Source of the DNA: Vitrella brassicaformis CCMP3155
Taxonomy: Eukaryota > Protista > Chromerida
NCBI GenBank assembly: GCA_001179505.1
Contig: CDMY01000275.1
Location: 372,001 to 436,000 of the forward strand
DNA: 64,000 nucleotides
Direction of reading: 5' to 3'
This document shows positions 15,286-62,973 of this stretch, one piece after another; within the stretch, counting starts at the first letter, position 1, and each line of letters begins with the position of its first letter. The position numbers were made by a program, and so were the translations under genes. The notes under the pieces were generated by a model. It was not told where the DNA came from, searched no databases, and saw only the letters and a list, made by a program, of their open reading frames with translations.

Positions 15286-15585
15286 NNNNNNNNNNNNNNN
15301 NNNNNNNNNNNNNNNNNNNNNNNNNNNNNNNNNNNNNNNNNNNNNNNNNNNNNNNNNNNNNNNNNNNNNNNNNNNNNNNNNNNNNNNNNNNNNNNNNNNN
15401 NNNNNNNNNNNNNNNNNNNNNNNNNNNNNNNNNNNNNNNNNNNNNNNNNNNNNNNNNNNNNNNNNNNNNNNNNNNNNNNNNNNNNNNNNNNNNNNNNNNN
15501 NNNNNNNNNNNNNNNNNNNNNNNNNNNNNNNNNNNNNNNNNNNNNNNNNNNNNNNNNNNNNNNNNNNNNNNNNNNNNNNNNNNNN
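15286..15585. other. Assembly gap (300 N)
   Basis: Run of N. The ~26 nt before the gap (AGTTTGTCTAGTGGGGAGGGCGGGTG) reappears immediately after it. Confidence 1.
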
Positions 15586-42200: not shown

Positions 42201-43641
42201 GCGGTGCGCTGACTTACTTGCCAGCCGCTGAGATGTACGGTGTGCCCTCCTCGGCAGCTTTCTGGGCTGCCCGACCCACGATGCCATCCTGCGCACACCA
42301 CACCAGCAACACACTCCGTGTCCGTGTGTGTTGCTTTGCTTTGCTGGCACGTACCTGGAAGAAGGGCTCGCTGCCGTAGCCAATCTAATCAAGGCACGCA
42401 GAATCAATCAATGCCACACCGTGTCACGGGTGGGTCGTCTGTTCAGCCACTCCCCACTCTCTTTGTGTCTGTCTTACGTCATCCACGACGATGTCGCACT
42501 CTTTGGCTAGACGGAGGATGTTGTTTGCAAAGGAGGCTGCTCCCTTGAATGCAGTGGCGAAGGATAGGTCCGCACCGGGAGCCAGGTCGTATACCAGCTG
42601 AGCCATCGCTGAATGAATGAATGAATGATCACATACAGACAGACAGAAACAGACAAAAGTCCCCCCCTCCGCCTCCGTCTGCCCTGACGCCCTGCCCACG
42701 CACCTCTGCCCTCGTCGATGCTCTCTGCACACACGCAAACACACACACACACAGACACACACACACACACACAGAGACAGAGAGAGAGAGAGAGCAATGG
42801 GTCGAGTCGACACGTTTGGTCCCTCCCTCCCTCCCTTCCTTGGCGTGGCGTATGTTTTGTATTTGCGTGCGTCCGTACCTTGGCCATTGAAGTCATCGAG
42901 GATATGGACACCGTCCCTGGGCAAGTCGCCGGTGCTGATGTCGCTGGCCGCAGAGCCAGGAGCGCTCCTCGATGTGTCGAACGAGTCCGAGATGATCCCT
43001 ATCCTCTGCCTCCGACCCGTCACTCCCAGCGTTGTCCTCACCACATCCACATGGTGCGCCGCATCGGCTTGGCTGGTCGTCTGGCCGGTCGCCACATCAT
43101 GGCTGCCAAGTAAGTCAAATGCCCCCCGGTGGACGATAAAGCTCCGAGATGCATAGTGGAGCCTCGGCAGCGACGGCAGCTTGTCGATGGCCGACACGGG
43201 CAGCCGCCCAGACACCACCTTGTGGAACGCCTCACCGTCTTCCATGCCCACCTGCTGCAGCTCCTCCAGCAGCCGAGGGGCGTCGTCCAGGCTCGTGGCA
43301 GCAACATCGACCGTCACCAGGTCAGTTGCGCGGATGGTGGTGAAGCTGCTCACGGCCTCGAGCGGCGCCTGCTGCTCTCCGCCCACCTCATCGCGGCGGC
43401 TGCGAGCAGTTGGCTGTTGCCTCTGCCGGCGGGGTCGCTGGACAGTGGCTGGTGCGCGTACGCCCTCGCCTTCAGGCTGTATGCCGATGAGTGACGAGAG
43501 CGTCCAGCTGATCTTGGCATCCACTGCAGCCTCCTCTGCACTCACGGTTTCGCCCCTGTACTTGGCCACAGACCTGCCGTCCGCCGGGTGCAGACATAGC
43601 AGGGCAACCGAGAGGGCCAAGATGGCAGCTGCTCGCCGCAT
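39241..43641 (-). CDS. Secreted S53-like/S8 subtilase (bacterial type) with prodomain and long C-terminal extension
   Basis: Signal peptide MRRAAAILALSVALLCLHPADG (an alternative ATG is at 43656). Motifs IGIISDSF, DEGRAMAQLVYDLAPGA, IVVDDVGYGSEPFFQDG, YISAAGN, KPDITAADG, FFGTSAAAPHVAA, GHGLMDA. Stop at 39241. Confidence 0.9.
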
Positions 43642-43736
43642 CCTGCCAATTACCATTTTTCCCTCCTGCTCGCTTTCAACCGTTAACGGCCGGAAAGAGG
43701 AAGGAGCGGTTTCACGGAATGTTTTAGAGCAACCTC

Positions 43737-43747
43737 TGCGAGCTTAG
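43737..43747 (+). promoter_or_regulatory. Candidate promoter motif TGCGAGCTTAG between the divergent S53-like protease and LRR-CRMP starts
   Basis: Exact 11-mer in the ~300-bp intergenic region. Confidence 0.6.
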
Positions 43748-43942
43748 CTCAAAGACTTGGGGAAAGGCTGCCTGTTTTTTTGCCATCTATTGCAGCACAG
43801 CTTCAGACTGGCGCAGACCGAGCAGCCGCCAGCTATATCAGCGCAGCAAGCCGGGAGTGGCTGGTGGCATCTAAGGAGAGAGGGAGAGACGGTCATGCCG
43901 TGTGGTGACTGACTGGCTTGGCTGCCTGAGGAGCGCACAGCA

Positions 43943-46900
43943 ATGGCTGCCTCGATCAGTCTCGTCGGCGCGGCGGTTTTGCTATCTTTGGGTGCCGCTG
44001 CCCTTCCGCCTCTCTCTCGACTTGACCGGCGCCAGCTGCAGGTGGATCCAAGGAACGTCACACTACCAGGTGAGCACCTGCACTGAGACCACAAGACGCA
44101 CACGTATGCAATAATCCTATTTATCTGTGCCTCCCTGTGTTTATCTGCTGTGTGACTGTGCACTTTGTCTTTGTGTGTTCCCCCCTCCCAAGGCTGCCCG
44201 CCGCCGCCTGCCCCGGAGGGCTGGTCGTCCATGTGGAAGTACTGCACCTTCGCCCGCAACCCGGTGTTCCGCAGAGATGTGCCGTTCGACCAGGTCAGGA
44301 GTGACCCGTCATCCATCCCCAAGATGCCCGTGGGCGGCGACCAGCTCATTCCACTCGACAGAATGAAGGAGCTCTCCGAGTGCGCCAAGTGCCAGGAGGA
44401 CGCACCGGCTCTCTCCCGGATCTTCCGCGAGGTGGGCATGGCCAGCGACTACGTCGAGGAGTGGCTCAAGAAGAACGTCTGCCAGGTGCCGGGCGTCCTG
44501 TGTGTGGAGATTGACGAGAAGTTCGCCGCCGGCGGAGACAAGCAGGGCTACTTCATCTTCCTCACCGGGCGGGACATCCCCGACGTGCCTGTGCTGCTGG
44601 TCCATGGGCCGCGGGACCAGGAGGTGCAGGTGGACGTGACGCGACTCAAGGCGGCCAATGGGATGGGGCGGGGGCGGCGGAGGTACACACCGCTGCCCAA
44701 GTCCTTCTATGACCTGCGGGCTGTGATGGGCCTGGTGGTGCAAAGCTTTTCGCTGGCGGGGCGGCTGGATGAGGCCATTGGGAAGGTCCAGTCACTTCGG
44801 CTGCTCTACTTCGAAAGGGTGGGCCACACAGATAGATCAGATGAACGAACGCACGCAGAAAGCGACGACAGTGTGTTGACTGACTCCTTCCTTTTCTTTC
44901 TCTTTTTCTTCGTTCGTCAGACGAGTCTGATGGGTCCTCTGCCGGCCAACCTGACGACCCTTTCCCACCTGCAAGGCCTGTACCTCATGGAATCCAACTT
45001 CAGCGGCCCCCTACCGCCCTCACTGCCTGACCTCAAGAACCTGCAGGTGCTCAAGATCGACAAGACGCGCATCGAGGGGTCGCTTCCATACGACATGGGT
45101 CGGCTAAAGAACCTCCGCATCCTCACCGTCACCCACAACCCGCACATGGACGGGCCCGCCCTCCCCCAGTCGCTCACCGAGTGCACCAACCTCACACACA
45201 TCCGCCTTGATGGGTTTCCTGGAGGCCAGGTGCCGCTGTCCATCGGGTCGCTCAAGAGGCTGCGGCTGCTGTCTGTGCCCCGGTGCAACCTCACGGGTGG
45301 TCTGCCGCCGTCTCTGGCCAACATGAGGGCGCTGCGGTACATTGACTTGTCTCAGAATCGGCTGATGGGGAGGGTGCCCGACGAGCTGGGCACCAGAATG
45401 GACCAACTCGTTCACATCAACCTACAAAATAACTCGGTCAGTCAGTCAGTAAGAGAGTAGGCATCTTGTCCTTGTCAGGCACACAAATACGCGACGCGGG
45501 TCTGTGTGTGGTGTGGGATGCCATCCAATACCATCAATGCAGCTGTCTGGCCCGTTGCCAGCCTCTTTGGGTTCGGCGGCCAACCTCAAGTTCATCTTCC
45601 TCAGCCACCAGGCAGACCAGGGCTTCCAGGGCCCCATACCTGAAGCCTGGGGAAACCTGTCAAGACTACGCACACTCGAAGCCAGAAACAACGATGTGCG
45701 TGACCTGACCTCATGACACAATTGCATCGCGAGATATCCACCTGGCCTTTCGCTGTGTGTTGCATGGCGTATTGTGTTGTGTCCTTTAGCTGAGCGGTCC
45801 GCTGCCAGGCAACCTGTCAGGTATGGCGTCTCTGATGCGGCTGGATATTCGTGAGAATCGGCTGTCGGGCACTCTGGATCCCCTCTCACCACTCAAGTCC
45901 CTCATGATCCTACACTTCGATGACAACCAGGTCGGAGACAGACAACACACCCACATAGGCGCACACAAACGTCCACAGAGCGCACGCCGCATGTCGATCC
46001 AACCATTCTTCAGTTTGAGGGCGGCATCCCCTCGGCGTTCGCCAACTTTACCGAGCTGCTGGCGCTCTCAGGAGACAAAAACAAGTGAGGCGGCGCAGAT
46101 GCACAGACACACGCAGGGGCCTGGCACCGGTCGGGAAGATCAAGAGACTCTCCGCCATTGGGGTGTGTTGTGTTGCCGTGCAGGATAAGCAAGATTCCGC
46201 TGTACCTGGACAACCTGCGGTCACTCCGTTCGCTGCGTCTGAGGTCCAACAGTCTGAGTGGCGTGCTGCCGTCCCTGGCGCCCCTGAGGAGCTTGGAGGT
46301 GCTGCAACTCAATGACAACGACATCGAACGATACCAAGACATCGACGACTTCCCCATCAGGTAGGTCAGTCGGGTCGGGCATTCTCAGTGCCTTCCCTGT
46401 GCCCTCTAGGTGAAATGCGTTTGCCTTCCTTGACGTGTGTGTGCAGCTTGAAGGTTCTTGATCTGAGTGGGAATCGGCTCCGCAGCCTGCCGTACAGTTG
46501 GCTGGAGCTGCCGCAGCTGAGGAGTTTGCGGGTGGCCCGCAACCAGGTGTCGCGACTGCCGGCATGGGGACATCGGGGCATTTGCAAAGGCACTGATGGG
46601 GCCATTGTCGGTGAGTGAGTGCAGTGAGGAGCACGGCGCGCGTGTGTAGAAGTCCCTCTTTTAACCACCACCTGTCCTGTGTGTGTGTGTGTGGTATAGA
46701 TGTGTCAGCAGCGAATTATCCCGACCTGGAGAGGGTCAGCAGTTTCTGGCCCAACTTGCGTGAGGTGGACATGTCCGACAACCCCCTTGACATGAGCGTC
46801 AACGACCTCATGGCCGCATTCAAGACAGCATTCAAGTCAGTACTGAATGCATTGACAGACACCAGACTCGTCCATCATCTTCTATCTACTTGTTCTCCTC

Positions 46901-49900
46901 TGTCTGTTACCACACATGGTCGCCCAGTCTGGAGGTGCTTGAGGCGTCCAACTGCGGCCTATCCGGGAGGCTGACGTGCGAGGCGCTCTACTACACCACC
47001 CACTCGTCCATCGCAACCACGACCCCCTCCCTGCAGTCCGTCATGGGCTATACCAACCTCGCAGTCCTGGACCTGCACGGCAACCTCATCCAGTCCCTCG
47101 ACACCTTCCCTGCCCGTCTCCTCAGCCTCTACCGGGCCGACTTCCGCAACAACCGTCTCACCACCATCGTCACGCCATCCAACAGCACATCGGTGTCGCA
47201 GCGGGCCGTGTCGATTCTGGAGCTGGGTGCGGCGCGGAGCCGCCAGCCGTGGTCCTGGAGTTGGCTGTCGATCGACCAGGTGGACCTGACGGGCAACCCG
47301 GAGCTTCGGCTGCCGTCGGTGGAGCGGCTGAACATACAGAGCTGCGAAGAGCTCTACTCGCGAAGAGTCATGATGGAGCGGAGCGGCCAGGTGCGGAAGG
47401 CTTCCGTGGTGGCTGACCCTCTTGGCTATGCTCGGCGCCGGCAGCCCAACGGGGCGGCTGTGTTCGAGTGCACGCACCCGTGCTGGAACTTCAACCTCAT
47501 TCAGGTTGATGACACGGTGAATGAGGCGGCCCTCTGCCGGTGCGAGCGGGGCTACTTCGGGGTGGGGCGAGACTGCGCCAAGTGTCCGGCCAACACGTAC
47601 TCCAACGCACAAGTGGGGACTGAGCGGTGTCTGCCGTGCTCCAGCGGCCAGGTGTCGGTGGCGGGGTCATCCAAGTGCGTCTGCGACCGGGGATTCACAC
47701 TCAGCGGCAGTGTGTGCAGCCCGTGTGGCAAAGGTAGGTCAGGGAGGCAGAAATCGAGACAAGACAGAGTGCGCAATGCACTCACACAATGCGATCGCTG
47801 TTTTGTTTGTTTAGGTTCATACAAGGAGTTGGTGGGTAGCGGCGAGTGCACCCGCTGCCCCGACGACAAGTTCACGTCGCTGCCCAACAGCACCTCGCTC
47901 GACGACTGCTTCTGCCACTCAAACTACATCCGCCACCGCCACCTCACACAGTGCTCAGAGTGCCCCCGCGGCCTCGACTGCGAGGCCCCGATCCGCTTCC
48001 ATCCCCCGGTGCAGAGCGGCTTCTACCAGCTCATGGTAGACCTGGACCTCACGGCCCTCCACGACAGTAGTGACAGCAGCTGGCGGCAGCTGAGGCGCCG
48101 GCAGGGAGGACACTGGAAGGCCACTGGTGCTGGCAATGTGGAGCTGGACAGCCTGGGGGTGCCGCTGGAGCGGGGCGATCAGAAACCGTTCAGGACAATG
48201 TCATCGTAAGGCGTGCACTGCACACGACAGACGAGAGAGGGAGGGAGAATTGGGGAGGGAGTGTATCTGGTGCGTGTGTGTGTGTGTGTGTGTGTAGGTA
48301 CGATGCTGGTGTGACGAGTCTGCCGGTGGTGGTGGAGTGCCCCGTCCGCAAGGCGTGCAAGGGATCAGACCTACACACGGGGCAAAACATATGCATGGTA
48401 GGGTAGGAAAGCGCAGGCCAGGCGCAGCCAGCCAGCAATTCACACCCAACTATAGCTAGCATAGGCACACACATGCATGGCATGGCCATGCATCCCATCC
48501 CATCCCCCGTGTGTCCGTGCCGTGTCTGCAGACCGGTCAGTCCGGCTTCGTGTGTGGTTCCTGCGATGAGGGCTTTGCCCGCATGAGCAACCTCCGTCCC
48601 TGCGGCAAGTGCCCCCCGGCCTGGCAGAACGTCATGACCAACCTCTGCCTCTTCGCCATCACACTTCTCGCCATATTCGGATGGACCATACTCGCACAGA
48701 GGTCACCCACCTCCCCTCCCCTCCCCAAGACACCAAGACATAGCAAGTGCCCGTACGTCACTTACCTGTTGTCGTCGCTTGTTGCTTGTTTCGTCCAACA
48801 GGGGCGCGCATCTGCAGCGTGCGGCGCCCCACTCGATGCTTCTGAAGATGGCCCAGAACCACTTCAGTGCGGTGAGCGGCCTGGCCATGGTCGTGTCCAC
48901 CGACTGGCCAGTGTGGTCAGCAAGCCTCGTGGAAGACGTCTTCGCCTGGGAGGGAGGGGTTCCTGTTGGTACGTGTGTGCAGTCACTCACTGCATGAGCC
49001 AGCAGCAGAGCAGGGGTGACGCACCGCACTGCTCATACATACACCACACCACGGCCGTTGTCTGAGCTGTGCGTGGCGTGTGTGTTGTTATATCAATCTA
49101 TCTCTTTGTCAGCGTATTCTGCGTGGGAGTGTCTGCTGCGGCCGGCGTGGGGTCCTCAGGCGGTCATGTTCCGCCACGCTGTCTGGATCATCCTGCCTCT
49201 CGTCTGGCTCATCATCGTCACTGCCGTCGGTAAGCTAGCTGCAAAGAGGCCTGCCAGTGCACACCACACAAACAGCGTATATCTGACCTATGTATGATAC
49301 TCTCCAACGCTATCCTCCTCTCTATCTGCCTTGCTGTCTGTCTGTCAGCCGCGTTGATCATCGCCATCAAGACGGGCTACCTCAAGAGGCTGTGGCACAC
49401 AGTTCAGCAGTGGGAGGTCTGGCAGCTGTCGACATGGCGACGGTGGCTCAACTGGCTGTACACTCGCCTCACCCGCAACTCCCGCCGGTTCGCGTCCATC
49501 TTCTTCACACGCAACGGCTTCCACAGTCACAGTCCCGACGACCACCTCACCGACGCCACACACAGCACCCACTGCAGCGACCACTATGCCATCAAGCCCG
49601 CACCACCCGTCCGGAAGATGACATCTGACGGGGACATTGGCGGCTCCCACCCGCCATCGCCGCCCCCCGAGCTCAGGCGCAGCGCCAGCAGCTCCTCCCG
49701 GATTATGGGTTTGTTCGACGTGCCCGAGTGGTCGCCGGATGGGCGTGTGACGTGGCAGTCGGTGGGAGTCTTCCTGGCCCAGTGCGCCCCTCTTTGGATA
49801 GCGACCATCACGCTGATCCACCCCACCGTGACCAAGAGCATGCTGGAGCTCCTGCGGTGCCGGCGGATGCCCTACCTGCCCACCGAGTTCGTAGCCGACC

Positions 49901-52900
49901 CCTCCAGATCCCCGCCCGTGGATACCGTCAAGGACACCCTGAGGAGCCGGCTGTTGCTGAGCCCGTCCCTGCTGTGCTTCCAGGACGACCACCGGATCTT
50001 TGCCTGGATGGGGACGTTCGGGCTGTGTTTCTGGGGGATCGCTCCCATCATCCTGTGCTTCGTGGTGCTGTGGGCCAAGCGGGCGTCGCTGTACCGGCCC
50101 TCCACACAGGAGAGATACGGTTTCCTCTACACCGGGCTCCGCAGACCCTTCTTCTTTTGGGATTGCGTATTCGCTGTGGTGAGTGAGTGAACTCAAGGCA
50201 CAGTTAGTTGTACACACAGCTGTCTCCAGTGCAATCAATTACCCCTTTGGTTGATCCGATCCCTCTCTGTGTGCTGTCTGTCTATCAGCGTCGCGTGGCG
50301 GTTCTGACGATTTCTCAGCTGCTAGACACGAGCGCGGCGCTGCTGCTGGGTTCGACGAGCATCGCAGTGCTCTCGCTGGCCCTGCAGCTGCTGTTTCAGC
50401 CGTTTGAAGCGAGGCTGGGCAACACGACCACCATTCTGCATCGGCACTTCGACATGGCCAACCGGCTGGAGTTCCAGGGGCTGGGCATCTGGACGGTCAG
50501 CTGCATCCTCATGCAGGTCGTGGTCCTGTTCGAGTTGTCCCCCAGCATCGCCGGCAGCATCATCTTCCTGGTGGCCATCATGAATATGTACCACTACGCC
50601 TCCCTCCTCTACCACATCTTCCGCCACTCGTTTGCCTTCCTGGCGTACAAGTACATCGACGAGAAGGAGGAAAGATCCCATATATTCAGTCAGTTAAACA
50701 GCCTAGCTAGTGGCACAACCACCTAAACTCACTCACCCAACACAGAGCATACATATGGATGGGGTGTGCTGTGCTGTGCTGTGTTGCTGTGTATGTTTAG
50801 GGTTGTTCCTGCGTGTGTGTCGTCCGATAATGAAGCACATCATCCGTCAGGAGGAGCGGCGCCGCGCGAGCATGCCCAAGGTCTTCCTCGACTACCCCAC
50901 AGGCACGCTCAACCTGCTCGAGCCAGCCGACGCCGGCCGCTCCCCCATATCGTCACACTGCACCAGCCCCCGCAGTGAGGCGCAGCGCTCCAAGACCGCC
51001 ACACCCACCGCCACCCTAACGCCCCCCGCCTTCCCACCCAGAATAATGGGGGGCGATGGCGATGACCACCGGCGGGCATTCATCCGCTACGCCCAGACGG
51101 CGTGGTGTCATGTGGTGTGGGCATGGTACTGGTGTGTGGGCAAGGCCACCGACTATGTGAGGGAGGTCCGGGCCGTGGTCGCCAGGATGAAGCTGCGGGA
51201 GCACCGGGCGAAGGGTCACCGCACCGGGGCGCTGGCGATGCAGATGACGGGCCACGCTATGGCGGACGCGATTGAGCTGCTGTCGATACGGCAGGAGCTG
51301 CCGGGGGACTTTGCAGAGTTTCTGTGGACCACCAGCTTCCTGGTCCACGCCCTCCGTATCAAGACAATGGAGGACCATGACTCAAAGAGTGAGTGAGTGT
51401 GTTGTCACTCACAACACATCAACACCAATCCGTCCCCCCCCCCCCCCCCCCCCCCCCNNNNNNNNNNNNNNNNNNNNNNNNNNNNNNNNNNNNNNNNNNN
51501 NNNNNNNNNNNNNNNNNNNNNNNNNNNNNNNNNNNNNNNNNNNNNNNNNNNNNNNNNNNNNNNNNNNNNNNNNNNNNNNNNNNNNNNNNNNNNNNNNNNN
51601 NNNNNNNNNNNNNNNNNNNNNNNNNNNNNNNNNNNNNNNNNNNNNNNNNNNNNNNNNNNNNNNNNNNNNNNNNNNNNNNNNNNNNNNNNNNNNNNNNNNN
51701 NNNNNNNNNNNNNNNNNNNNNNNNNNNNNNNNNNNNNNNNNNNNNNNNNNNNNNNNNCCCCCCCCCCCCCCCCCCACACACACAGACACACACAAACGGC
51801 AGGCTGCCACACTTGCTGGTCGGTCTTTCTGTGGTGTGGTGGCGATGTCAGTGAATCGCACGATCGTGATGCCGATTCCCGAGTCGGCCACAGCGGTGCC
51901 TGCGCCGCCTTCTCGCATGTCGACGAGGAAGCTGCCCGACGCGGCCCCGTCGATCCCCGAGAACAACCCGGCCGACTTCAAGTCGATGCCCACCATGCGC
52001 AGCACCACCGGCCTCAGCGAGGGCACATCGCTGCCGCCCTTCACATTCGATCGCAGGCTGCGCTCGGCCGGGGTGGCCCTCCATGACTTCCAAGTATGCA
52101 CACCGCAGACATGAGACCATGGTATGTACCAGGGTGTGTGTCCTTCTGTCAGTTGAATCTGAGTTACGTGGTGGACGACCTCCTTCGGCGTCAGCAGATA
52201 GCGGAGGGTCTGCTGCAGCAACAGGACACTGACGGCGGCAGCACGCTAGAAGGGGCCGAGGGAGTGGGTGATTGGCGCACACTGTACGAGTCCTTCAGGA
52301 GAGCCAAGCGATCCCTCATACAGGCGGGAACCAACCCGGTAAGTACGCACACGCATGTGCCAACATACCAACACACACACACACACTCGTGTCAATGTCT
52401 CTGCGTGTGTGTGTGTGTGTGTGTGGTCAGCGAGAGGTGTCCAAGGCCATCCGTCGCATAGCGAGCAACACGGCCTTGACCAGCAGCCGCGCCACCGACG
52501 AGCTGACCGTCGCCACCCCACCGCTAGCCAGCAATATCAGCCGATCCCGCTCCTTCCCCAACCCCCCGTTCACACCTGCACCACACACGGCATCAGCAGG
52601 GGCCGTGCTACCCTCACACACAGAGATCATGGCCGATGTGGAAGTCGACTCTGCGGCTGTGGACACCCTCACGGCCGCTGTGGAGACCTTCGCAGACACA
52701 GCCAGCGGACGGCTCCGTGATCCCTTCGAGTTCGCTCCCCCCGAGACCACCTCCCGCCCCGAGTCGGTGATGGGTTCGATCACACCACCCCGCCCGCCCT
52801 CCCCGCCCCGGCCCCCACCGCTGCGGTCCTTCACATCAACCCCATCCATGCCCTACAGCGACTTCTTTGATTTTGCCAACAGGGTCTACAGAGGGGCATA

Positions 52901-52901
52901 G
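43943..52901 (+). CDS. Large receptor-like membrane protein: signal peptide, plant-type LRRs, Cys-rich TNFR/GCC-like repeats, ~9 TM helices (CRMP-like) and cytosolic tail; continuity across the 51458-51757 gap assumed
   Basis: MAASISLVGAAVLLSLG. LRR cap VCQVPGVLC. More than 12 LxxLxLxxNxLxGxLP repeats. CAKCPANTYS/CLPCSSGQ/CSPCGKGSYK/CTRCPDDKFT repeats, CPVRKACKG...CGSCDEGF...CGKCP, then TMs including RYGFLYTGLRRPFFFWDCV. Confidence 0.8.
51458..51757. other. Assembly gap (300 N) flanked by poly-C on both sides
   Basis: Run of N with C homopolymers directly before and after. Confidence 1.
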
Positions 52902-54630
52902 ATAGCATCGCAGTGAAATAAGTGAGCGACGGGGGTGCAAGTGCAGTGCACAGAGAGAGGGAGCAGGGGAGCCGGATGGTATGGGATGGGTGGGGGTGGG
53001 GTGCATTCATTGCATTCGTTCATTCCTTGTGTATGTAATTGATTGAAGCTTAATGCATCGGTTGTGTTTTGTATCCGTGTGCATGACATGAATTGGTGCG
53101 TCCGTACAGTGAGTACATACGTATGTCTGAGGGTCGGTTGGATTGGGGGCGTGACTGACATGAATGACATTGATTGCATCTGTTCTCTTCCGGATCGTCA
53201 TCGGGCGGGGTGTGTGTCGACACGCCCCGCCTGACAACGACCCGGGAAGGAGCGACTGCAGCCCGGCCCGTCAGCCAACAGCTGACGTCGTGTAATGAAT
53301 CTCCCTATCTATCTCTCTCTGTCTCCAAATTGGTGTCGGTGCGCACACGTGCCGACCTGTGTGCTGTGCGTGTCCATGCTCTCACTTATGGACGAGGAGC
53401 GTCACGTCGGGTTGGTTATTTGCATATTTCTTTGTGGGGGTAACAAATGTTATGGATGGCTTTGTTCGTGCATGTCATGTTATGTCGTGTCGTGTCGTGT
53501 CGTGTGTGCTCTGCTGTGCCCCTAGTCAATTGATTGATTGCGTCGTGGATCGGATCGATAGCCATATTGTCGACCTTCGTGGGGTGCGTGTGCGTGTGTG
53601 CGGTAGTTCATTTGGTTTTCATGTATGGCTGGGGGGTTGGTGGTAGGTAGGTAGGTAGGTCGATGGCTTTGGCCAGTTGGCCGGCGCGGCTCGGTGGGTG
53701 GGTGACGACCACGCATTGTCCGTCATTTTGTAAGTCGGTGCACATAACTGACATGCACACATTACATACACACATGTCTCTAGGACTGATCCTTAGCTAT
53801 CGATGTGGAGGGTGGGTGGTGGTCACTCAACTCACCCTTTTATATATAGGCTGACCGGCTCCCTGTCTTATCTACCTACACACCCACCTACCTGCCCGTC
53901 TGTCTGTCTATCTGTCTGTCTGTCTGTCCGTCTGTCTGTCTGTACGTCTGTCTCTCTGCCTATGTGGTGTGCCGTGCGCTACGTGACCATCCAGCCAGCC
54001 ACCCACCGATGCGATCGATGGATGGATGTTCTGATGGAGGATGCGAGGCGAGGCGATGCGTAGGGAGGTTTTCGTTCGTCCAGTGTGTCGCCCAGAGGGA
54101 TACATACATCCTCCCGCTTTCTCCCCTCCCTCTCTCCCTCCTTTGGCTTTCCCCTCCCCTCCCCTCCTCTCCTCTCTCCCTCTAGCCATGCAGGAGTTGT
54201 TATCATACCAGCTACATGGCCTAGCATACATGTGTGTGTGTGTCTGTCTGTCTGTCTGCATGATGCTCTCGACCAACACGGCTGAGACACCTTGGCTGAC
54301 GTACAGACATCCGTACGATCGTACACGTACCGATGTACTTTTCTGTGAGCGTGTTGTGTGGCTTGGCTTGGGTGGGTGCATGTGTGTGTGCATGTGTGTG
54401 TGTGTGTGTGTGTGTGCGCCATCTATCCTATCGCATGTGCGAGTGACAGACAGACAGACTGACAGAGTGGTCGCGTCGCAAGTGACAGGACTCGTTGATT
54501 CGATTCTCTCTCAACAACATGACATGCCGCTACAAATATGTCCTGAAAACGCCCTACACACTAGCTACTTTCTTTCACAAGCAGAATCTGCCTCACCTAC
54601 ATTATCCACCCATCCATCCATGCCATTCAT

Positions 54631-57600
54631 CTAGACGTGCTTCTCCCACGGCCTCTCGTCTGACTCCCGCCATGCAGCTGCCAAATAATTCCTGTGTCTC
54701 CTGTGATGAGCCGCCGCCGACGAAGGGACCCGCGGCGCTAGCAACAATCCGTGGTTCCGCAACAGCATGTCCTCGGCAGCAAAGTAGCGCCACAGCCCCT
54801 CGGCCACGTGGCCGCTCAACTGCTTGTGGCTCTTGGAGGTCAGGGTGGGGCATGACTCCACCGTCCGCATCAATGCCCGCTTCTCCATGTGCGCGAATGG
54901 GCTGCTGCTGGTCTTCTTTCGCCTGGTGCGGTAGTCGATGGACACGTCCGGCGTGCGCCGCTTGGACTCTTTTGCCTTCTTGTCCTTCTCTGAGTGAGCA
55001 CTGCCGGGGGCCGTCAGCGCCTGCTGCTCAGCTATGGCGGTGAACGGCACCCCCAGACCCTTACGGATTTCCTCCTTGATGTTGGCCACCTCCTGTTGAT
55101 TGACAACACAACACACAGCCCGACGAACGGATAGATAGATGGATGGATGGCGGGGGCAGAGAGGATGTGTACGTCCGTCCGTTGTGTACTCACTCACTCG
55201 TTTAAGCGGGGAAAAATTCTGCGTGATGAGTCTTCTGGTGCTGCTGTCGACGGCGTACATGGCACTGCCTCGCACGGGAGTGGCCTTTGCCGATGCACGC
55301 ACCTCAGGCACTACAACCAACACACCCGACAGGAAACACGGGACACGTTGCATCATGCGGCTGCCATGCATTAAGCGTGGCTACTTACTTCCAGAGTCGA
55401 GCAGAGCGTCCTTTATCTCCTGTATGGTGATGTATCCTTTGAAGTTGTTGTCGATGGCGTGAAACAGCTCGTAGACGTCGCTCTGCTTGATGTCAAGGTC
55501 CAGCGAACTCAGCCAGGCGTCGAAATCCTCTGGCAGCAACTTCCGCTTCAGAGCTGCATCGACAACGCCAAAAGGAAGGTATTATAGGTCTCTACGACAC
55601 GCAGAGGATTCATTCCATGAACCCACCTTGCTGTTTGTCTGCCGTGCCTGCCCATGCGAGCTGGAGCGTGGTGAGGACATTTTGGACGGTGTGGAACTTC
55701 TGTGTCAGTTGCCCCGTCCATTCCGCAACCACAGTGGATGGCGCAAATATCTGCAGAGCATTGAGAAACCTGGGACAGCAAGGGAGGAGAGACATGGCGT
55801 ATTATGGTCTGCAATGAGCGGATTATCTGCACTGTTCGCTCACTCTTCGATGGTTACCTCCCCATTGCCATCCTCGTCCATCACTACATCACACCCACAA
55901 GCCAGAAACGGGTGTCTCCCTCCGTTGCCCAAGCTGCGTGTGTGCCGTACGTACATTCAAAGAGTGTCCTGGATTGCTCGGCGTTGATGTCCATCTGCCT
56001 CATGACCTGCTCGAACTCACTCGCATCAAGAGCCAAATTGCCGTCCTTATTACAAAGAGACAGACACATGGGCCACCAGTCAGGCCATCCATCAACGGGT
56101 GTCCAATGTTTGTTTCTCATCAATGGAAGTGCTCACCCACCTGATCCATTGATTGGAATGCATCCCTCACATGCTTAAAGCGCTTCAGCAAGTCACGATG
56201 GAAGTCCTCGAGAGTGACCGATGGCGCAGCGAGCCTGAGTGTCCTGGCGAGCTCAGCCCCCTGCAGCATCCCCTGTCCCTTGTCGTTTATGACCGAGAAA
56301 ATCCTCCTTAGCGCCTCTGGCTCCAAATTGATGTCACTGAAGCGCTTCTGAAAGTCATCGTAGGCCAAAAGCGTCATCTGACGGCACATATGCAGACGGG
56401 TCGACAGACCGCCCGGGCGCTGTTCCGGAAATGATGGGCCACGTACCGCCTTTATCTTGTGTGCTTTAAGGGCCTCATCAATTGAGCTTGCCCCGTGGAC
56501 CTGAAGCAAATTTGCACGAAACTCCTCCAATAACGTCAGTGCTGAACGAAGGCCAAATGCAGCCGACTGTGGAAACCACTCGTTGTCTCTGGTCATGTGC
56601 ATTTTCACTTACGAGGGACGCGACTAAGCGCAGTAAAGAAGGTGTTGAGTGTGACTTTGATCTTCCGCCCCGCCGCCGATCCGTGGCGTCCAGATGGTGA
56701 GAGGTCGGGGCCCTGTCCTGTCTCGTTCGGAAAAAAGGATGGCGCTGTCATTAGCTGGGAGCTGACGGGTGACCTCTCCAGGTCAGTCTGCAGCAGCTCG
56801 AAGATGATTTGGGTCTCCTGGGAAGTCGCGTTCAGCAAGTATTTGAAGACGACGGAGAACTCATCCGCGGAGAAGTCTTCATTCAAAGGGAACTTGCTGT
56901 TGTGTACGGCCTGGATTGAGAGCGGATGCGTGTACAGCCAAGCCATGTATATTATATTTCCGTGCCCACCTGCACGACACTTCCTTGTCTTTCCAGGAGC
57001 CTCTTTCGACACTCCAGAAATACTTGAGCTGAAAGGAAAAAGTATAAACGAAACGCATTTAGTGTGTCCCAGCCAGCTGTCTCCTGTCTCACCCGGCATC
57101 CTATCCAGTTCTCCAGTCAAGTCTCTCAGAGTCGGCTTTGTCTTCTGGCTGGTCTTCACCAGCATCTCGAAGCACTCTTGAAACAGGTCGACGTTGAGGC
57201 TGCCGGCGGCTTGCGGCACCGCTCGGCGCATCCTTCTCGCCTTTGCCACAGGGCTGGAATCTGGGCTGCCGGATGGGCTGCTGATGGGGGAGGGCAGCAG
57301 CGGCTGCAATAGGGTAGAAAGGGCGGCGATGAACTCGTCCTGCAAAAGACGTGGCAACAGACGACACGTCACATCACATCACATCACATCCATTGCATTC
57401 AGTCTTGTCCTTTCCTTGTTTAGCGGAGCTTCAGGGACAATCTTGGCGGTCTTCAGCACCCAGGACTGCAACGCTTCACCAAGCGTGTTGTACAGATACC
57501 GCAGGGCCCGACGAATCGACCCGAATACAACAGACTCTGAAGGCACCCACGAAATACATTCCCACACGTGGATTTGCAGGCGCCCTCTGCTCTCACCGAG

Positions 57601-58530
57601 ACTGAGGGCGGTTTTACAGCCTTGCCCCTGTGTGCGCTGATCGTCTACCCGGATCGGTCGCTTCCGCTGCGTCCTGTGTTGCCTAGCTTCTCGCAAGGCG
57701 GTAGTGAATTCCTTTGTTCCCATCTTTCTTGTCTGTGCCTGCAAATAAAGAAGAGCCATAAAAAAGGTCTGACTAGTCCCGGTGAAAGTGCTCTTGCCTA
57801 CCAGGCTATCCAGATCCCCTGTCCCGACTCTGCTTGCACTCTGGCCAAGATGTTGCAGCGACGATGGTAGTCTTGAAGGCACTCTCGATAATGTCCCTTT
57901 GGATGATGCCATTCTCGATAGTGTTCCCTTAGACCTTACCGCCTCCCTTGAATCGCTCGGCAGTGCATCAGGCCGCTCTATTTGCACGTCTTTGGTCGTC
58001 GCACGCTCTGCAGGCGGTGCAGGAGGCTCCGTCACCTCCGGCTCCATAATGCGAGTCTTCTTTTTCTCGAGGGGTACGGGGGAGGGGCGTCGGGTCGGCG
58101 AGTGATCGGGTGACCGTCTCCTTGCCGCTTTTGGACTGCTTTCGGGCGTCTCGGCTGGTAACATCTCACCGAGCAAATCCTTCATCTGAGCCTCAAACCT
58201 TGCAAGTGAGGGAAACCCTCTGTCGCCCATAATGCCAACAGTCTTCTTCCTTTCCAGCACCGACCCCTTGGCAGCCCTTGCCTTTCTCGTGGCCATACCG
58301 GGCGGGGTCACCAGCCGGGCTTCGGGCGAGGGAAGAATGTGAGGCGGGAGCTGCGGCTGGGGCGAGAGCGGCTGGATTTGGAAGATGTTGGTCACCCATG
58401 TTGTGGTCTTGGGCATCATCTGTTCGCCCTGCTCCGTGTCCTCTAAGCTCATGTGGAGGTCGGACCGCCGCCGCACCTCACTTTCTCTCCGTTCCTCAGG
58501 AGCCTGCTTCTGAGCGATGGATGGGTCCAT
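54631..58530 (-). CDS. Large multi-EF-hand protein with low-complexity N-terminus; start uncertain (58530 or 58653)
   Basis: EF-hand loops MDEDGNGEVTIEE (~55845-55885), IDNNFKGYITIQE (~55418-55456), KDGNLALDASEF and INDKGQGMLQGAE in GT-AG bounded exons. Confidence 0.7.
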
Positions 58531-58766
58531 ATGGATCTCAACGCCGGCCTGTTGACCGGCTGTTGACAGTATTAGGAAGACAACACGAGAAGAAACTGTT
58601 GTGGGAGACGTGTGAGGCCTTCGTTTGCGTACCAAGCTTGAGAATCTGGTCATGTCGTCTCAACAGGAGCCGCTGAGATACTGTCGGCCTCCTTCTGTTG
58701 ATCTCCATTGACGCTCACTCGACAACGCTCTTCAAAGGCAGCAGGAGACTTGAAAAGCCGTCTGTC

Positions 58767-58777
58767 TGCGAGCTTAG
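58767..58777 (+). promoter_or_regulatory. Candidate promoter motif TGCGAGCTTAG upstream of the EF-hand gene
   Basis: Exact 11-mer, 114-237 bp from the candidate starts. Confidence 0.55.
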
Positions 58778-58865
58778 CGCCGATTGCGCGTGTTTACGAG
58801 GGGCCGGCTGGGATCAGCTGTTTGCTTGTTAGCATGGGTGTTCGTCTTTTCCTGGGGCGAGGTGA

Positions 58866-59114
58866 ATGCTTGGGTGGCTGACATTCGGTTTCGCCGCCAC
58901 AATGCTGCTTCCCGGCTGGCATCTCCCCTCCCCAGCTCAGCCTCGTGTCACCCTCGCACCCAGCCCACAGCCAGCCCCATCGACAGCGTCTGTGCCCCAG
59001 GAAGACGAGTGCGACACGAAGAGTGTCTCGCACGTCGCCGAGACTGTGGAGGGGGCCTCTGCTGCTCCCGACCATCTCACGGGGACCGACCAGAAGGCGG
59101 ATAGCGGGGGCTGA
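58866..59114 (+). CDS. Possible small single-exon protein with hydrophobic N-terminus (82 aa)
   Basis: ORF MLGWLTFGFAATMLLPG...; lies ~90 bp downstream of a TGCGAGCTTAG motif and is divergent from the EF-hand gene. No homology recognised. Confidence 0.25.
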   Translation: MLGWLTFGFAATMLLPGWHLPSPAQPRVTLAPSPQPAPSTASVPQEDECDTKSVSHVAETVEGASAAPDHLTGTDQKADSGG

Positions 59115-59684
59115 GGAAAAGAGAGGGCGTGTTTGCATCTGCGGGTTAATTGGTGGATCATGGTCGATATATGTCTCACCGTGTTTTCTGCAGAGAAGGA
59201 CGCTTTTGGTTGATTCGCCTGGCGTAGATATATGGGTCACTGAATACGTACGTGTACGTGAGAACGGGACATTCGTTTACCGAATACATAGAGCAATGTC
59301 ATTTCTGCCCTGTCTGGTACTCGGTCGCATGTGCGCGCTTCGTGACGTGCTCCTACCCACGCAAAAGGCTGATTGCAGTGAAGTGATTGTAACAGAAATC
59401 AGCTTTTCGGCATGACAGACACGCACGCGACGAAGCGGGCACTTGTGCAATCCCACAGTGCACGTGTCTCGCTTCCATCACACTATCATCCGTCTGTACC
59501 ACATAACCAACCGTCGATGCCTCAACTACCTAAAGTACCTAACACACATAGAAACCTGCCTTCCAACTACAGCTCTTAAGACACGTCATCATCTTGCCAC
59601 AACCCATACCGCCACAGACACGTCGCGTCGCATCACACCGCCCGCTCTCTATCCTGTCTGTCTATCAGTCACGCACTCACTGCA

Positions 59685-61890: not shown

Positions 61891-62973
61891 TCATGGCTGC
61901 TCCATGAACACCACCCGCACTCCCTCAGGATCGATCACAGCAAAGGCAGCCGCACCGTACACCGATGTGTCACATTGCTCGCTACACAAGGGCACGCCGC
62001 TGTCCACCAGCCTCCTTTTGACAGCAGCAAGCTCATCTGCGGGAGCGAAGAAGCCGATGCCGACGAAGCCTGCCTCATTGGCCAAGTCGGGAAACGTTAT
62101 AGACGCCATGGACGGGACGTGCTGAAGCTCCAGCTGGGTGTACGGCCTCTTCCTGCAGACACGCCAGCACACCCGCAGAGGATGGAGGATGACACTGGCC
62201 TGAAGTCTCCCGCCCACTTTCCTCCCTTCCTTGATCCCTGCCTACCAGAGCCATTCACGGTTTGCAACGGCATTTATGTCACTGTCGGGCGGCGACTCGC
62301 TAGTGGTTCCGAGGAAGTGCAGCACGAAGCCGTACTCATCCACCGGCTGTCTCGAGAGGTACGCCATACCCAGTACGTCACGATAGAACCGCAGCGTCTC
62401 GTCCAGCTTGGTTACACGAAGAGTGATCTGCCCCACACCGACTGACTGGCCCAGAGGATGGTCACCCTTCACATCGTTGGGCCCGATTCTCCTGACGTGT
62501 TGGTCGAAGTCGTGCTGGAGCAGCTCAATGGTGTAGCGGGCGGGGTCGGAGATGTGTGTCAGATATCCGATATCGAAGAACTGGCTGGCCTTCGACACAG
62601 AAACGCCCGCATTCCGAAGACACTCGGTGGCGAAGTCAACATCTGCACGGCACACAACGGGGGAGTGTGGATTCACGACAATCCATGCATCGTCGTTCAT
62701 CTCACCTCGCAGTGCAAGCCCTATCTTCCAATATGCGTCGCTTCGCTTGTGCTTGTATGGCCCAATGCTCGTCTGACGGCCGAGCTGCAGCTCCAGCCAA
62801 GCCGACTGCGGCTGACCCTCGAAGCCCAGAAACACCGACTCGCTCACATGTGCTGCAGATGAGGTCCTCTCCGCCATAATGGACATGCCGATGCGTTGTC
62901 GATAGAAGACAACCACAGCATCCTTCTCAGCGGCACTGATGCGGAGGCTGACAAAGCCCAGACGGACTGCCAT
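61891..62973 (-). CDS. Two-domain glyoxalase I-like (VOC superfamily) protein, 3 exons
   Basis: Domain 1: GFVSLRI...FYRQRIGMS...WLELQ...YWKIGLAL...DPARYTIELL. Domain 2: GQITLRVTKLDETLRFYRDVLGM...QLELQH...DPEGVRVVFME*. Introns 62643-62705 and 62153-62245. Confidence 0.85.

What the first reader, a model, noticed from the sequence alone, without database searches (positions are those of the whole stretch)
43943..52901. LRR-CRMP hybrid: plant-type LRR ectodomain fused to Cys-repeat and ~9-TM modules
Seen: signal peptide, a CxxxGVxC cap, more than 12 plant-type LRRs, several CxxCPxxxY/F repeats, a juxtamembrane CPxxxAC...CxxCxxGF...CxKC knot, about nine TM segments with a YGFLY..FFFWD motif, and a long cytosolic tail with no kinase domain recognised. 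Established: cysteine repeat modular proteins (CRMPs) with such repeats and a multipass TM domain control rhoptry discharge in apicomplexans and exocytosis in ciliates, and plant LRR ectodomains bind ligands. Inference: a ligand-sensing multipass receptor of a free-living apicomplexan relative that may trigger secretion. I do not recognise this architecture as characterised.
Basis: partly seen in the sequence, partly recalled or inferred. Interest (0 to 1): 0.75.

Follow-up and report, generated by a model that had tools for sequence, protein, structure and literature searches.

The report
LRR-headed CRMP-family multipass receptor gene
This is one intact gene of the alga Vitrella brassicaformis, a free-living relative of the malaria and Toxoplasma parasites. 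It puts a plant-style leucine-rich-repeat sensor on the nine-helix membrane body of the CRMP family, which those parasites need to trigger invasion. It is one of many such genes in this genome, not a one-off.

Summary
Window 43943-52901 (+) holds one 21-exon gene. All 20 introns are GT..AG, and the exons add up to the 2192 codons of the public model CEL99184.1 (Vitrella brassicaformis, unnamed). The assembly gap lies in an intron between poly-C runs; three paralogs align across that junction without an indel.

The protein has a signal peptide, an LRR N-cap, about 20 LRRs, ephrin-receptor-like Cys repeats, a CRMP-type Cys knot (DUF7630), nine predicted membrane helices and a 500-residue tail with no recognised domain.

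The link to CRMPs is homology, not motif resemblance:
- BLASTP to Plasmodium CRMP2 gives 3e-23 and to the Neospora CRMPA orthologue 5e-25, collinear from the Cys repeats to TM9.
- Profile-profile probability is 99.9%.

The gene sits in a Vitrella-only clade and is not an orthologue of CRMPA. At least 45 paralog loci exist, and at least 10 public Vitrella models carry LRRs. This scan has already met the same architecture on other DNA of this genome.

The TM4-9 core is also homologous to Pfam PF06011, the fungal Pkd2/Flc "TRP-like" family. That suggests a channel-like output. Function is untested, and no solved fold matches.

The parts
43943..52901 (+). Whole coding region. The 21 exons are 43943-44069, 44193-44818, 44921-45436, 45543-45695, 45790-45930, 46014-46084, 46184-46360, 46447-46610, 46700-46835, 46928-47733, 47815-48205, 48298-48397, 48532-48701, 48802-48968, 49113-49229, 49349-50178, 50289-50688, 50801-51388, 51852-52093, 52153-52338 and 52431-52901 (stop at 52899-52901).
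   Evidence: All 20 introns are GT..AG and 59-144 nt long, apart from the gap intron. The exons sum to 6579 nt, which is 2192 codons plus the stop. Each exon translation maps exactly onto the public protein P0005 = CEL99184.1. My own junction scan agrees at 18 of the 20 junctions. It missed the small exon 48298-48397, and the junction into 49349 follows the public model.
43943..44017 (+). Signal peptide (aa 1-25)
   Evidence: A hydrophobic N-terminus, MAASISLVGAAVLLSLGAAAL, with a Kyte-Doolittle peak of 2.08. No dedicated signal-peptide predictor was available.
44477..44500 (+). LRR N-terminal cap motif CQVPGVLC (aa 138-145), preceded by WLKKN
   Evidence: Read directly from the sequence. It resembles the CxWxGVxC cap of plant LRR ectodomains. 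Pfam LRRNT_2 did not score.
44780..47321 (+). LRR solenoid, about 20 repeats (aa 239 to about 835), interrupted by 9 introns. The first 12 or so repeats are of the plant-specific 24-residue type.
   Evidence: Pfam LRR_14 1.7e-23, LRR_8 2.2e-22, LRR_4 7.8e-20, LRR_1 1.7e-19. Repeat list. Six of the intron positions fall just after the LxxLxLxxN part, before LSGPLP and its variants. Best PDB sequence hits are plant LRR-RK ectodomains.
47463..47987 (+). Cys-repeat stalk (aa 883-1030), ephrin-receptor-like / GCC2_GCC3 repeats
   Evidence: Pfam Ephrin_rec_like 3.1e-10, two stretches. It lies partly in the same uninterrupted exon (46928-47733) as the last LRRs. It aligns with the Cys repeats of Plasmodium CRMP2 and Neospora CRMPA.
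47988..48205 (+). Poorly conserved linker (aa 1031-1103). Its exact exon end is the least certain part of the model.
   Evidence: It is open in frame up to the GTAAGG donor at 48206. It shows little similarity to CRMPs in this stretch. There is no cDNA to confirm it.
48332..48612 (+). Juxtamembrane Cys knot CPVRKAC...CGSCDEGF...CGKC (aa 1115-1163), the CRMP hallmark domain DUF7630. It is split by the intron 48398-48531.
   Evidence: Pfam DUF7630 5.8e-5 at 23.6 bits, below the cut-off of 27. The same family scores 7e-17 in Plasmodium CRMP2 and 2e-17 in Neospora CRMPA. The knot aligns residue for residue with theirs in BLASTP. The second half of the knot and TM1 share one exon (48532-48701).
48622..49374 (+). 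TM1-TM3 with an extracellular amphipathic segment (aa 1167-1296)
   Evidence: Hydropathy peaks at aa 1167-1194 and 1264-1300, with a weaker helix at about 1205-1224. It is collinear with the same region of CRMP2 and CRMPA. The AF2 model of paralog P0011 shows the matching helices with pLDDT 72-93 by ten-residue block, apart from one loop block at 61.
49375..49740 (+). Cytosolic loop between TM3 and TM4 (aa 1297 to about 1418), Trp/Arg-rich and then Ser/Pro-rich
   Evidence: Read from the sequence. No Pfam hit. The matching loop is disordered in the paralog model.
49741..50666 (+). Conserved TM4-TM9 core (aa 1419-1690). It contains IHPTVTKSML, a Cys-bearing extracellular hairpin, YGFLYTGLRRPFFFWD (50116-50163) and QPFE...ANRLE. 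It is split by the intron 50179-50288.
   Evidence: The two exons align collinearly with single-ORF paralogs. A profile of this core finds 5324 proteins, including Plasmodium CRMP2 at 3.6e-28 and the Neospora CRMPA orthologue at 3.6e-27. An HMM built from apicomplexan cores alone hits this protein at 1.9e-21. hhalign gives 99.9% to the apicomplexan set and 99.5% to proteins that pass the PF06011 cut-off.
50667..52898 (+). Cytosolic tail (aa 1691-2192). It has a juxtamembrane RRRASMPKVFLDY segment shared with CRMPs, and a module at aa 1843-2125 (51235-52697) shared with Vitrella paralogs only.
   Evidence: No Pfam family and no kinase. The ESM Atlas gave nothing above 0.81. BLASTP to P0010, P0170, P0001, P0008 and P0009 ranges from 2e-27 to 2e-7. 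The juxtamembrane part aligns with Neospora CRMPA.
51389..51851 (+). Intron that holds the assembly gap (N at 51458-51757) between two poly-C runs, followed by a CA repeat
   Evidence: GTGAGT donor and TGTCAG acceptor. Only 163 real bases are read, which is close to the size of the other introns. Paralogs align through the exon junction without an indel. The public model also treats it as an intron.

Best explanation
Shown here: this is an intact Vitrella brassicaformis gene for a 2192-residue type-I-oriented multipass membrane protein of the CRMP family in the broad sense. An extracellular plant-type LRR solenoid of about 20 repeats sits on an ephrin-receptor-like Cys-repeat stalk and the CRMP juxtamembrane Cys knot. 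These are followed by nine predicted membrane helices and a roughly 500-residue cytosolic tail. The stalk, the knot and the whole membrane domain are homologous to the apicomplexan CRMPs that are required for rhoptry discharge. The TM4-9 core is also homologous to the Pfam PF06011 'TRP-like' family of fungal Pkd2/Flc proteins.

Inferred: the LRR head binds an external ligand or surface. The paralogs keep the membrane body and swap or diversify the head (LRR, Venus flytrap plus LRR, and other domains), as expected of a sensor family. Binding is passed through the rigid disulfide-rich stalk to the membrane core. The output is most likely a local ion (Ca2+) flux or a conformational signal to partners bound by the tail, and this triggers a fast cortical response such as regulated exocytosis in the flagellate stage.

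The protein is a lineage-specific paralog, not the orthologue of CRMPA.

The confidence of 0.6 is for the whole statement. The identity part alone is about 0.9, and the channel-like output about 0.3-0.4.
For: One gene:
- 21 exons, all introns GT..AG, 6579 nt, equal in length to the public model.
- The last LRRs and the first Cys repeats share one exon, and so do the knot and TM1.
- The same order of parts runs end to end in paralogs: P0007 is 31% identical over aa 100-1699 in a single alignment, and P0170, P0171 and P0002 are collinear too, as is the metagenome protein P0079.

CRMP homology:
- Profile hits to Plasmodium CRMP2 and the Neospora CRMPA orthologue.
- Collinear BLASTP at 3e-23, 5e-21 and 5e-25.
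- DUF7630 knot.
- hhalign 99.9%, E 6.8e-36, and an apicomplexan-only HMM at 1.9e-21.

Sensor-family pattern:
- At least 45 loci with the core.
- Heads include LRR; ANF_receptor plus LRR; Laminin_G_3; beta-helix; and TIG.

PF06011 link:
- 22 six-frame matches in this genome. At least 18 of them lie at places where the window's TM piece also matches, and 8 are over Pfam's cut-off.
- 37 of 81 relatives match PF06011, best 1.4e-15.
- Cut-off-passing members P0064, P0074 and P0130 align to the Vitrella and apicomplexan cores at 99.5% and 99.3%.

From papers:
- Fission-yeast Pkd2, whose membrane domain is labelled TRP-like from Pfam/NCBI domain predictions (PMC6727746), passes Ca2+ on membrane stretch when reconstituted (PMC9727806).
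- CRMPs are needed for rhoptry discharge in Toxoplasma and for mucocyst exocytosis in Tetrahymena (PMC9670195, PMC9815656).
Against: - No functional, expression or localisation data exist for this gene. I could not check cDNA.
- The window's own membrane exons do not hit PF06011 directly. The link rests on profiles and on paralogs.
- PF06011 matches cover only model positions of about 190-405 out of 426.
- That PF06011 is the Pkd2/Flc family is my own knowledge plus the domain figure in PMC6727746. No fungal member was aligned here.
- No solved structure resembles the membrane domain. Foldseek E was 0.4 or worse, and the best VIA Z values were 7.7 and 8.9, within the noise for helical bundles. 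There is therefore no structural support for a pore, and no resemblance to canonical TRP channels or to GPCRs.
- Channel activity in the Pkd2/Flc family itself rests on few experiments.
- The gene sits in a Vitrella-only clade, so function cannot simply be transferred from CRMPA/B.
- Vitrella has no demonstrated rhoptry-type discharge that depends on such proteins.
Confidence: 0.6

Rival explanations
1. It is an adhesion or recognition protein of the cell surface or cyst wall. In this reading the LRR head binds, and the multipass body is only an anchor or scaffold, with no signalling or ion flux.
For: LRR solenoids and Cys-rich repeats are common in adhesins. Apicomplexan CRMPs work inside a complex with adhesin-like partners, MIC15 and TSP1 (PMC9815656). 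No catalytic or signalling domain is found in the tail.
Against: A nine-helix body with invariant polar motifs (GFLY, FWD/YWE, PFD, NRxE) is conserved from chromerids to apicomplexans and green algae. That is far more than an anchor needs. The tail also carries a module conserved among paralogs.
Confidence: 0.2
2. It signals like a G-protein-coupled receptor, as was proposed for TgCRMPa and PfCRMP1. The LRR head would then act as in LGR-type GPCRs.
For: Sparvoli et al. report GPCR-like predictions for TgCRMPa and PfCRMP1 (PMC9670195). The layout of a large ectodomain, a Cys-rich stalk and a helical bundle recalls class C and LGR receptors.
Against: There are nine predicted helices, not seven. 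No 7TM Pfam family is hit. GPCR chains appear only as noise-level partial matches in the fold searches. The one family the core does match is PF06011.
Confidence: 0.05
3. The gene model is an artefact. Two neighbouring genes, an LRR protein and a CRMP-like protein, would have been merged by the annotation and by the first reader.
For: No cDNA was available to me. The join between exon 11 and the knot exons depends on two predicted introns and a poorly conserved linker (47988-48205).
Against: LRRs and Cys repeats lie in one uninterrupted exon, and so do the knot and TM1. There is no in-frame stop, and every junction is canonical. The same end-to-end order occurs in at least 7 other Vitrella proteins and in a metagenome protein. 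A single BLASTP alignment to CRMP2 spans the Cys repeats, the knot and TM1-3.
Confidence: 0.04
4. It is a decaying or redundant copy in a recently expanded family, with no function of its own.
For: The family is large, and some paralog loci carry stop codons.
Against: All 21 exons are open, and the conserved motifs of the core are intact. It is only 31-44% identical to its nearest paralogs, so it is an old copy that has stayed intact.
Confidence: 0.05

Closest known systems
Apicomplexan cysteine repeat modular proteins (TgCRMPA/B, Plasmodium CRMP1-4)
   Same: Signal peptide, ephrin-receptor-like Cys repeats, DUF7630 juxtamembrane knot, nine-helix membrane domain with the same core motifs, a cytosolic juxtamembrane segment, and a long C-terminal tail. 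Homology is shown by profile, BLASTP and hhalign.
   Different: The head is a plant-type LRR solenoid, where the apicomplexan proteins carry Kringle, MAR or the Plasmodium-specific DUF7628-7635 domains. The gene lies in a Vitrella-only clade outside the CRMPA clade. CRMPB/CRMP3-4 and the Tetrahymena CRMPs were not among the sequences I could name, so their relation is untested. The distal tail is shared only with Vitrella paralogs. The organism is a free-living alga.
Chromerid flytrap-LRR CRMP-like proteins (Vitrella CEL96669 and CEM30150, Chromera Cvel_1746)
   Same: The same LRR, ephrin-like repeat, DUF7630 and multipass body.
   Different: They carry an additional N-terminal ANF_receptor (Venus flytrap) domain, which this gene lacks. 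They fall in other branches of the core tree.
Pfam PF06011 'TRP' family (fission-yeast Pkd2, budding-yeast Flc1-3; TRP-like membrane domain)
   Same: The overall plan is a signal peptide, an extracellular domain, a multipass TRP-like domain and a cytosolic tail (PMC6727746). The TM4-9 core is homologous to proteins that pass the PF06011 cut-off.
   Different: There is no ML-like N-terminal domain. Cys-repeat stalk and LRR head are present instead. Only the C-terminal half of the PF06011 model is matched. This gene's own exons do not score against the model directly. No fungal member was aligned here.
Plant LRR receptor kinases and receptor-like proteins (FLS2, PEPR1, GSO1, BRI1)
   Same: 24-residue LxxLxLxxNxLSGxLP repeats and a CxxxGVxC-type N-cap. 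These are the best sequence matches in the PDB.
   Different: Plants have one membrane helix and a kinase, or a short tail. Here there are nine helices and no kinase. The similarity is at the level of repeat type and is not evidence of a shared whole-gene origin.

Membership tests
CRMP family (cysteine repeat modular proteins) | Cys-rich EGF/ephrin-receptor-like repeats N-terminal of the membrane domain | tested here: met
   Pfam Ephrin_rec_like 3.1e-10 with two stretches. The repeats align with those of CRMP2 and CRMPA.
CRMP family (cysteine repeat modular proteins) | Juxtamembrane Cys knot of the 'conserved core' (Pfam DUF7630) | tested here: met
   DUF7630 at aa 1115-1163, E 5.8e-5 and 23.6 bits, just under the cut-off of 27. 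It aligns position for position with the knot of CRMP2 and Neospora CRMPA, where DUF7630 scores about 1e-17.
CRMP family (cysteine repeat modular proteins) | Multipass membrane core homologous to that of named CRMPs | tested here: met
   Profile hits at 3.6e-28 and 3.6e-27. BLASTP 3e-23 and 5e-25. hhalign 99.9%. An apicomplexan-only HMM hits at 1.9e-21.
CRMP family (cysteine repeat modular proteins) | Nine membrane helices, N-terminus outside and C-terminus in the cytosol | tested here: inconclusive
   Hydropathy gives 8 clear helices plus 1 weak one. AF2 models of paralogs P0011 and P0004 fit nine helices. No dedicated topology predictor and no experiment were available.
CRMP family (cysteine repeat modular proteins) | Orthology to the CRMPA or CRMPB clade | tested here: not met
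   The gene sits in an 11-row Vitrella-only clade (SH-aLRT 97). The CRMPA-type apicomplexan proteins form a separate 15-row clade with support 100. CRMPB-type sequences were not sampled.
CRMP family (cysteine repeat modular proteins) | Needed for regulated exocytosis (rhoptry or mucocyst discharge) and sited at the exocytic apex | not testable with these tools
   Known only for Toxoplasma, Plasmodium and Tetrahymena proteins (PMC9670195, PMC9815656).
Pfam PF06011 TRP-like (Pkd2/Flc) family | Match to the family model over its curated cut-off | tested here: not met
   This protein gets no PF06011 hit, either at E<=0.01 or exon by exon at E<=10. Paralog loci reach up to 32.1 bits against the cut-off of 28.5, and 37 of 81 relatives match.
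Pfam PF06011 TRP-like (Pkd2/Flc) family | Profile-level homology of the membrane core to cut-off-passing members | tested here: met
   hhalign of the Vitrella clade (this protein as first row) against P0064, P0074, P0130 and P0103 gives 99.5%, E 8.3e-23, over 219 columns.
Pfam PF06011 TRP-like (Pkd2/Flc) family | Cation (Ca2+) permeation | not testable with these tools
   Shown by reconstitution for fission-yeast Pkd2 only (PMC9727806).
Plant-type LRR receptor kinases | Plant-specific 24-residue LRRs with an N-cap | tested here: met
   Repeat list. Pfam LRR families. Top PDB hits are GSO1, PEPR1 and FLS2.
Plant-type LRR receptor kinases | Single membrane helix followed by a protein kinase domain | tested here: not met
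   There are nine predicted helices, and no kinase family is hit anywhere in the protein.
G-protein-coupled receptors | Seven-helix bundle recognisable by family model or by fold | tested here: not met
   No 7TM Pfam family. GPCR chains appear only at noise level in four fold searches.

The most novel reading that the evidence does not exclude
The membrane core shared by this gene, its many chromerid paralogs and the apicomplexan CRMPs is a Pkd2/Flc-type (PF06011) cation-permeable module. On this reading CRMPs are contact- or ligand-gated channel-receptors, and the chromerid LRR- and flytrap-headed forms show the ancestral job: turning an external cue into a local Ca2+ signal that fires exocytosis. 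That would give a concrete, testable mechanism for how the CRMP complex triggers rhoptry discharge, which a 2026 paper still calls unknown (PMC13672358).
Probability: 0.3. Interest if true: 0.85.

Novelty: new variant of a known kind. Interest (0 to 1): 0.5.

Why it matters
CRMPs are essential for host-cell invasion by Toxoplasma and matter for Plasmodium transmission, yet what their membrane body does is unknown (PMC13672358).

A free-living relative that carries dozens of CRMP-type bodies under interchangeable sensor heads (LRR, flytrap) argues that the body is a general signal-output module and the head is the input.

The profile link to the Pkd2/Flc TRP-like family points to ion flux as the output. 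That can be tested by reconstitution or electrophysiology on these simpler algal proteins or on TgCRMPs.

For this single gene the gain is modest. It is one more member of a family that this scan has met several times in the same genome.

Tried and rejected
- Word-based homolog search with the largest membrane exon found nothing. This is explained by the tool's length filter, not by absence of relatives.
- The same tool with P0005 residues 1100-1740 found only 7 proteins. Identity is too low for shared words.
- A PDB sequence search with the core profile gave 0 hits at E<=10.
- Four fold searches on two AF2 models of paralogs were run: P0011 whole (pLDDT 65, most membrane-region blocks 81-97) and P0004 core (pLDDT 83). 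Foldseek found nothing better than E 0.4. The best VIA Z values were 7.7 and 8.9, on generic helical bundles. I therefore reject any claim of a GPCR fold, a canonical TRP fold or any other known fold. I also do not claim that the fold is new.
- Pfam on the tail and the ESM Atlas on the largest tail exon gave nothing. The first two Atlas calls failed on length.
- Neighbouring ORFs on both strands gave no informative families, apart from a glyoxalase-like piece at 62242-62973. There is no tandem CRMP paralog on this contig.
- Templeton & Pain 2016, the review most likely to mention such architectures, is not held in the library.
- Woo et al. 2015 has no CRMP or LRR text in its main body.
- No held paper combines 'cysteine repeat modular' with 'transient receptor potential'. 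None describes LRR-CRMPs in chromerids.
Searches used single exons by reference, or the public model P0005 that a search returned.

Full report
**What is in the sequence**

The window is contig C275:372001-436000 of a 72.7-Mb, 1064-contig genome. The public protein that matches it names the organism as Vitrella brassicaformis CCMP3155. Three-frame reading of 43500-53500 shows a chain of open segments on the + strand that shift frame every few hundred bases. This is the pattern of a gene with many short introns.

A scan for in-frame GT..AG junctions linked the segments with introns of about 60-140 nt. In the LRR part, six of the introns fall just after the 'LxxLxLxxN' half of a repeat. The next exon then starts with LSGPLP or a variant of it (LMGPLP, FEGGIP).

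The representative-protein search returned a 2192-residue public model, P0005 = CEL99184.1 / UniProt A0A0G4EP32, named 'unnamed protein product' or 'EGF-like domain-containing protein'. Every one of 21 exons translates to an exact stretch of it. The exons add up to 6579 nt, which is 2192 codons plus the stop. All 20 introns begin GT and end AG.

I did not build a joined protein of my own. Searches used single exons by reference, or this public model.

**The assembly gap**

The N run at 51458-51757 has poly-C on both sides. It comes 69 bases after a GTGAGT donor at 51389 and ends 94 bases before a TGTCAG acceptor at 51851. The 163 bases actually read are close to the size of the other introns. 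The gap is therefore most simply an unreadable C homopolymer inside an intron.

The independent test is protein collinearity. The tail module at aa 1843-2125 is conserved in the paralogs P0010, P0170 and P0001. All three align straight through the junction ...MEDHDSK|MNRTIV... with no insertion. Nothing coding seems to be missing, and the frame continues.

**Anatomy**

- Signal peptide, aa 1-25.
- A 200-residue N-terminal region that ends in an LRR cap, WLKKNVCQVPGVLC.
- About 20 LRRs from aa 239 to about 835, of which the first dozen or so are 24-residue plant-specific units. Pfam gives LRR_14 1.7e-23, LRR_8 2.2e-22 and LRR_4 7.8e-20. For one LRR exon, the 40 best PDB sequence hits are all plant LRR-receptor ectodomains, most of them receptor kinases such as GSO1, PEPR1, FLS2, MIK2, HAESA, BRI1 and PSKR.
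- Ephrin-receptor-like Cys repeats (Pfam 3.1e-10).
- A poorly conserved linker.
- A Cys knot, CPVRKAC...CGSCDEGF...CGKC, that matches Pfam DUF7630 (5.8e-5, just under the cut-off).
- The membrane domain, and then a roughly 500-residue tail without any family hit.

Hydropathy and AF2 models of two paralogs fit nine helices with the N-terminus outside. In this layout TM1-3 come first, then a 120-residue cytosolic loop. TM4 and TM5 are joined by a Cys-bearing extracellular hairpin. A short cytosolic helix carries YGFLY...FFFWD, and TM6-9 follow.

**One gene or two**

- The last LRRs and the first Cys repeats lie in one uninterrupted exon (46928-47733). The second half of the knot and TM1 share another (48532-48701).
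- The same order of parts runs end to end in other Vitrella proteins. P0007 is 31% identical over aa 100-1699 in a single alignment, and P0170, P0171, P0002, P0008 and P0009 are collinear too. So is the metagenome protein P0079.
- A single BLASTP alignment to Plasmodium CRMP2 spans Cys repeats, knot and TM1-3.
- The weakest point is the linker at 47988-48205 and the two predicted introns after it. Only cDNA can settle their exact borders.

**Relation to CRMPs**

Pfam has no model for the membrane core, and the word search was blind to long proteins. I therefore searched the genome itself with the TM4-6 exon. It gave 51 six-frame matches at about 45 places, which is a lower bound. I aligned the core from diverse paralogs with the two window exons (A1) and ran the profile against 1.84 billion representatives. 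It found 5324 proteins at E<=1e-3.

The named hits include:
- Plasmodium vinckei and P. berghei CRMP2 (3.6e-28);
- Neospora NCLIV_026200, a Kringle-plus-MAR protein and therefore the CRMPA type (3.6e-27);
- Cardiosporidium, Theileria and Babesia relatives.

Pairwise BLASTP of the window's protein gives 3e-23 (TM4-9) and 5e-21 (Cys repeats to TM3) against CRMP2, and 5e-25 and 3e-17 against the Neospora protein. All of these alignments are collinear. DUF7630 turns out to be a CRMP-derived family, scoring about 1e-17 in both apicomplexan proteins. An HMM built only from 14 apicomplexan cores finds the window's protein at 1.9e-21 when scaled to the whole library. hhalign between the Vitrella and apicomplexan sets gives 99.9%, E 6.8e-36.

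**Place in the family**

In a tree of 72 cores, the window's protein falls in an 11-row clade of Vitrella proteins only (SH-aLRT 97). The CRMPA-type apicomplexan proteins form their own 15-row clade with support 100. The gene is thus a lineage-specific paralog. CRMPB-type and Tetrahymena sequences were not among the hits I could name, so the deeper branching is open.

LRR heads are common in the Vitrella family: P0002, P0003, P0007, P0008, P0009, P0018, P0170 and P0171. Others add a Venus-flytrap (ANF_receptor) domain in front of LRRs: P0024 and P0083, and Chromera Cvel_1746. More distant relatives carry Laminin_G, beta-helix or TIG heads.

Notes of this scan show the same architectures found on other pieces of this genome. 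Published work already says that Chromera has 'many diverse' CRMPs (PMC9815656). I found no held paper that describes an LRR-headed one.

**What the membrane body may do**

Weak Pfam hits of paralogs to PF06011 ('TRP', the fungal Pkd2/Flc family) led me to test that link.
- The model finds 22 places in this genome. At least 18 of them lie at loci where the window's TM piece also matches, and 8 are above Pfam's cut-off.
- 37 of 81 relatives match it, best 1.4e-15.
- Proteins that pass the cut-off (P0064 at 57.5 bits, Chlamydomonas incerta P0074 at 43.8, P0130 at 38.1) align to the apicomplexan cores at 99.3% and to the Vitrella cores at 99.5%.

The window's own exons do not reach the model directly. 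Only the C-terminal half of the model is covered.

Fission-yeast Pkd2 has the same plan: signal peptide, ectodomain, TRP-like multipass domain and cytosolic tail (PMC6727746). It passes Ca2+ when the membrane is stretched in a reconstituted system (PMC9727806). No held paper links CRMPs with TRP.

The structure searches add nothing. Neither the whole paralog model nor the isolated six-helix core has a convincing solved relative. There is thus no fold-level support for a pore, a GPCR or a canonical TRP channel.

**Verdict**

The functional reading, a ligand sensor that triggers secretion, is reasonable but untested. My preferred mechanism adds a channel-like output on the strength of the PF06011 link. 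The gene is annotated but uncharacterised, and it is one of many like it. I rate it a new variant of a known kind, of moderate interest by itself. It has higher interest as part of the family-wide argument about what CRMP bodies do.

Noticed in passing
genome-wide; e.g. G000:C291:126981-127469(-), C751:6444-6785(-), C520:98763-99107(-): Pfam PF06011 (the fungal Pkd2/Flc 'TRP-like' model) matches 22 places in this genome. At least 18 of them are at loci that also match the window's CRMP-type TM piece, and 8 are above the curated cut-off. The 14 prokaryote control genomes gave none.
   Followed up: yes
P0074 (Chlamydomonas incerta KAG2444938.1), P0064, P0130: The CRMP-type six-helix core is not confined to alveolates. 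At least one green-algal protein (P0074, Chlamydomonas incerta, with a beta-helix head) matches both the Vitrella core profile (1e-16 to 1e-19) and PF06011 above its cut-off. P0064 and P0130 do the same, and P0130 has a weak EF-hand match, but their organisms were not looked up.
   Followed up: partly
G000:C291:125784-130441 (L005, L006): Two paralog copies about 1.26 kb apart on one contig have identical 290-residue core translations and an N run just downstream. This may be an assembly duplication and not two genes.
   Followed up: no
window 15286-15585: A second 300-N assembly gap lies elsewhere in the window.
   Followed up: no
window 42424-43656 (-): The upstream neighbour on the opposite strand has long open segments with CA/GT microsatellites in its introns. 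It gave no Pfam hit for the piece tested. Another note of this scan reads it as an S53-like peptidase.
   Followed up: no
window 62242-62973 (-): An open frame with a glyoxalase/dioxygenase-superfamily match (5.6e-8). The other large minus-strand ORFs at 54631-61575 have no family hit.
   Followed up: no
introns of the gene, e.g. 48270-48298, 51775-51795, 52360-52420: Many introns carry (CA)n or (GT)n runs, and one carries a long poly-C tract. The poly-C tract is the likely cause of the assembly gap.
   Followed up: partly
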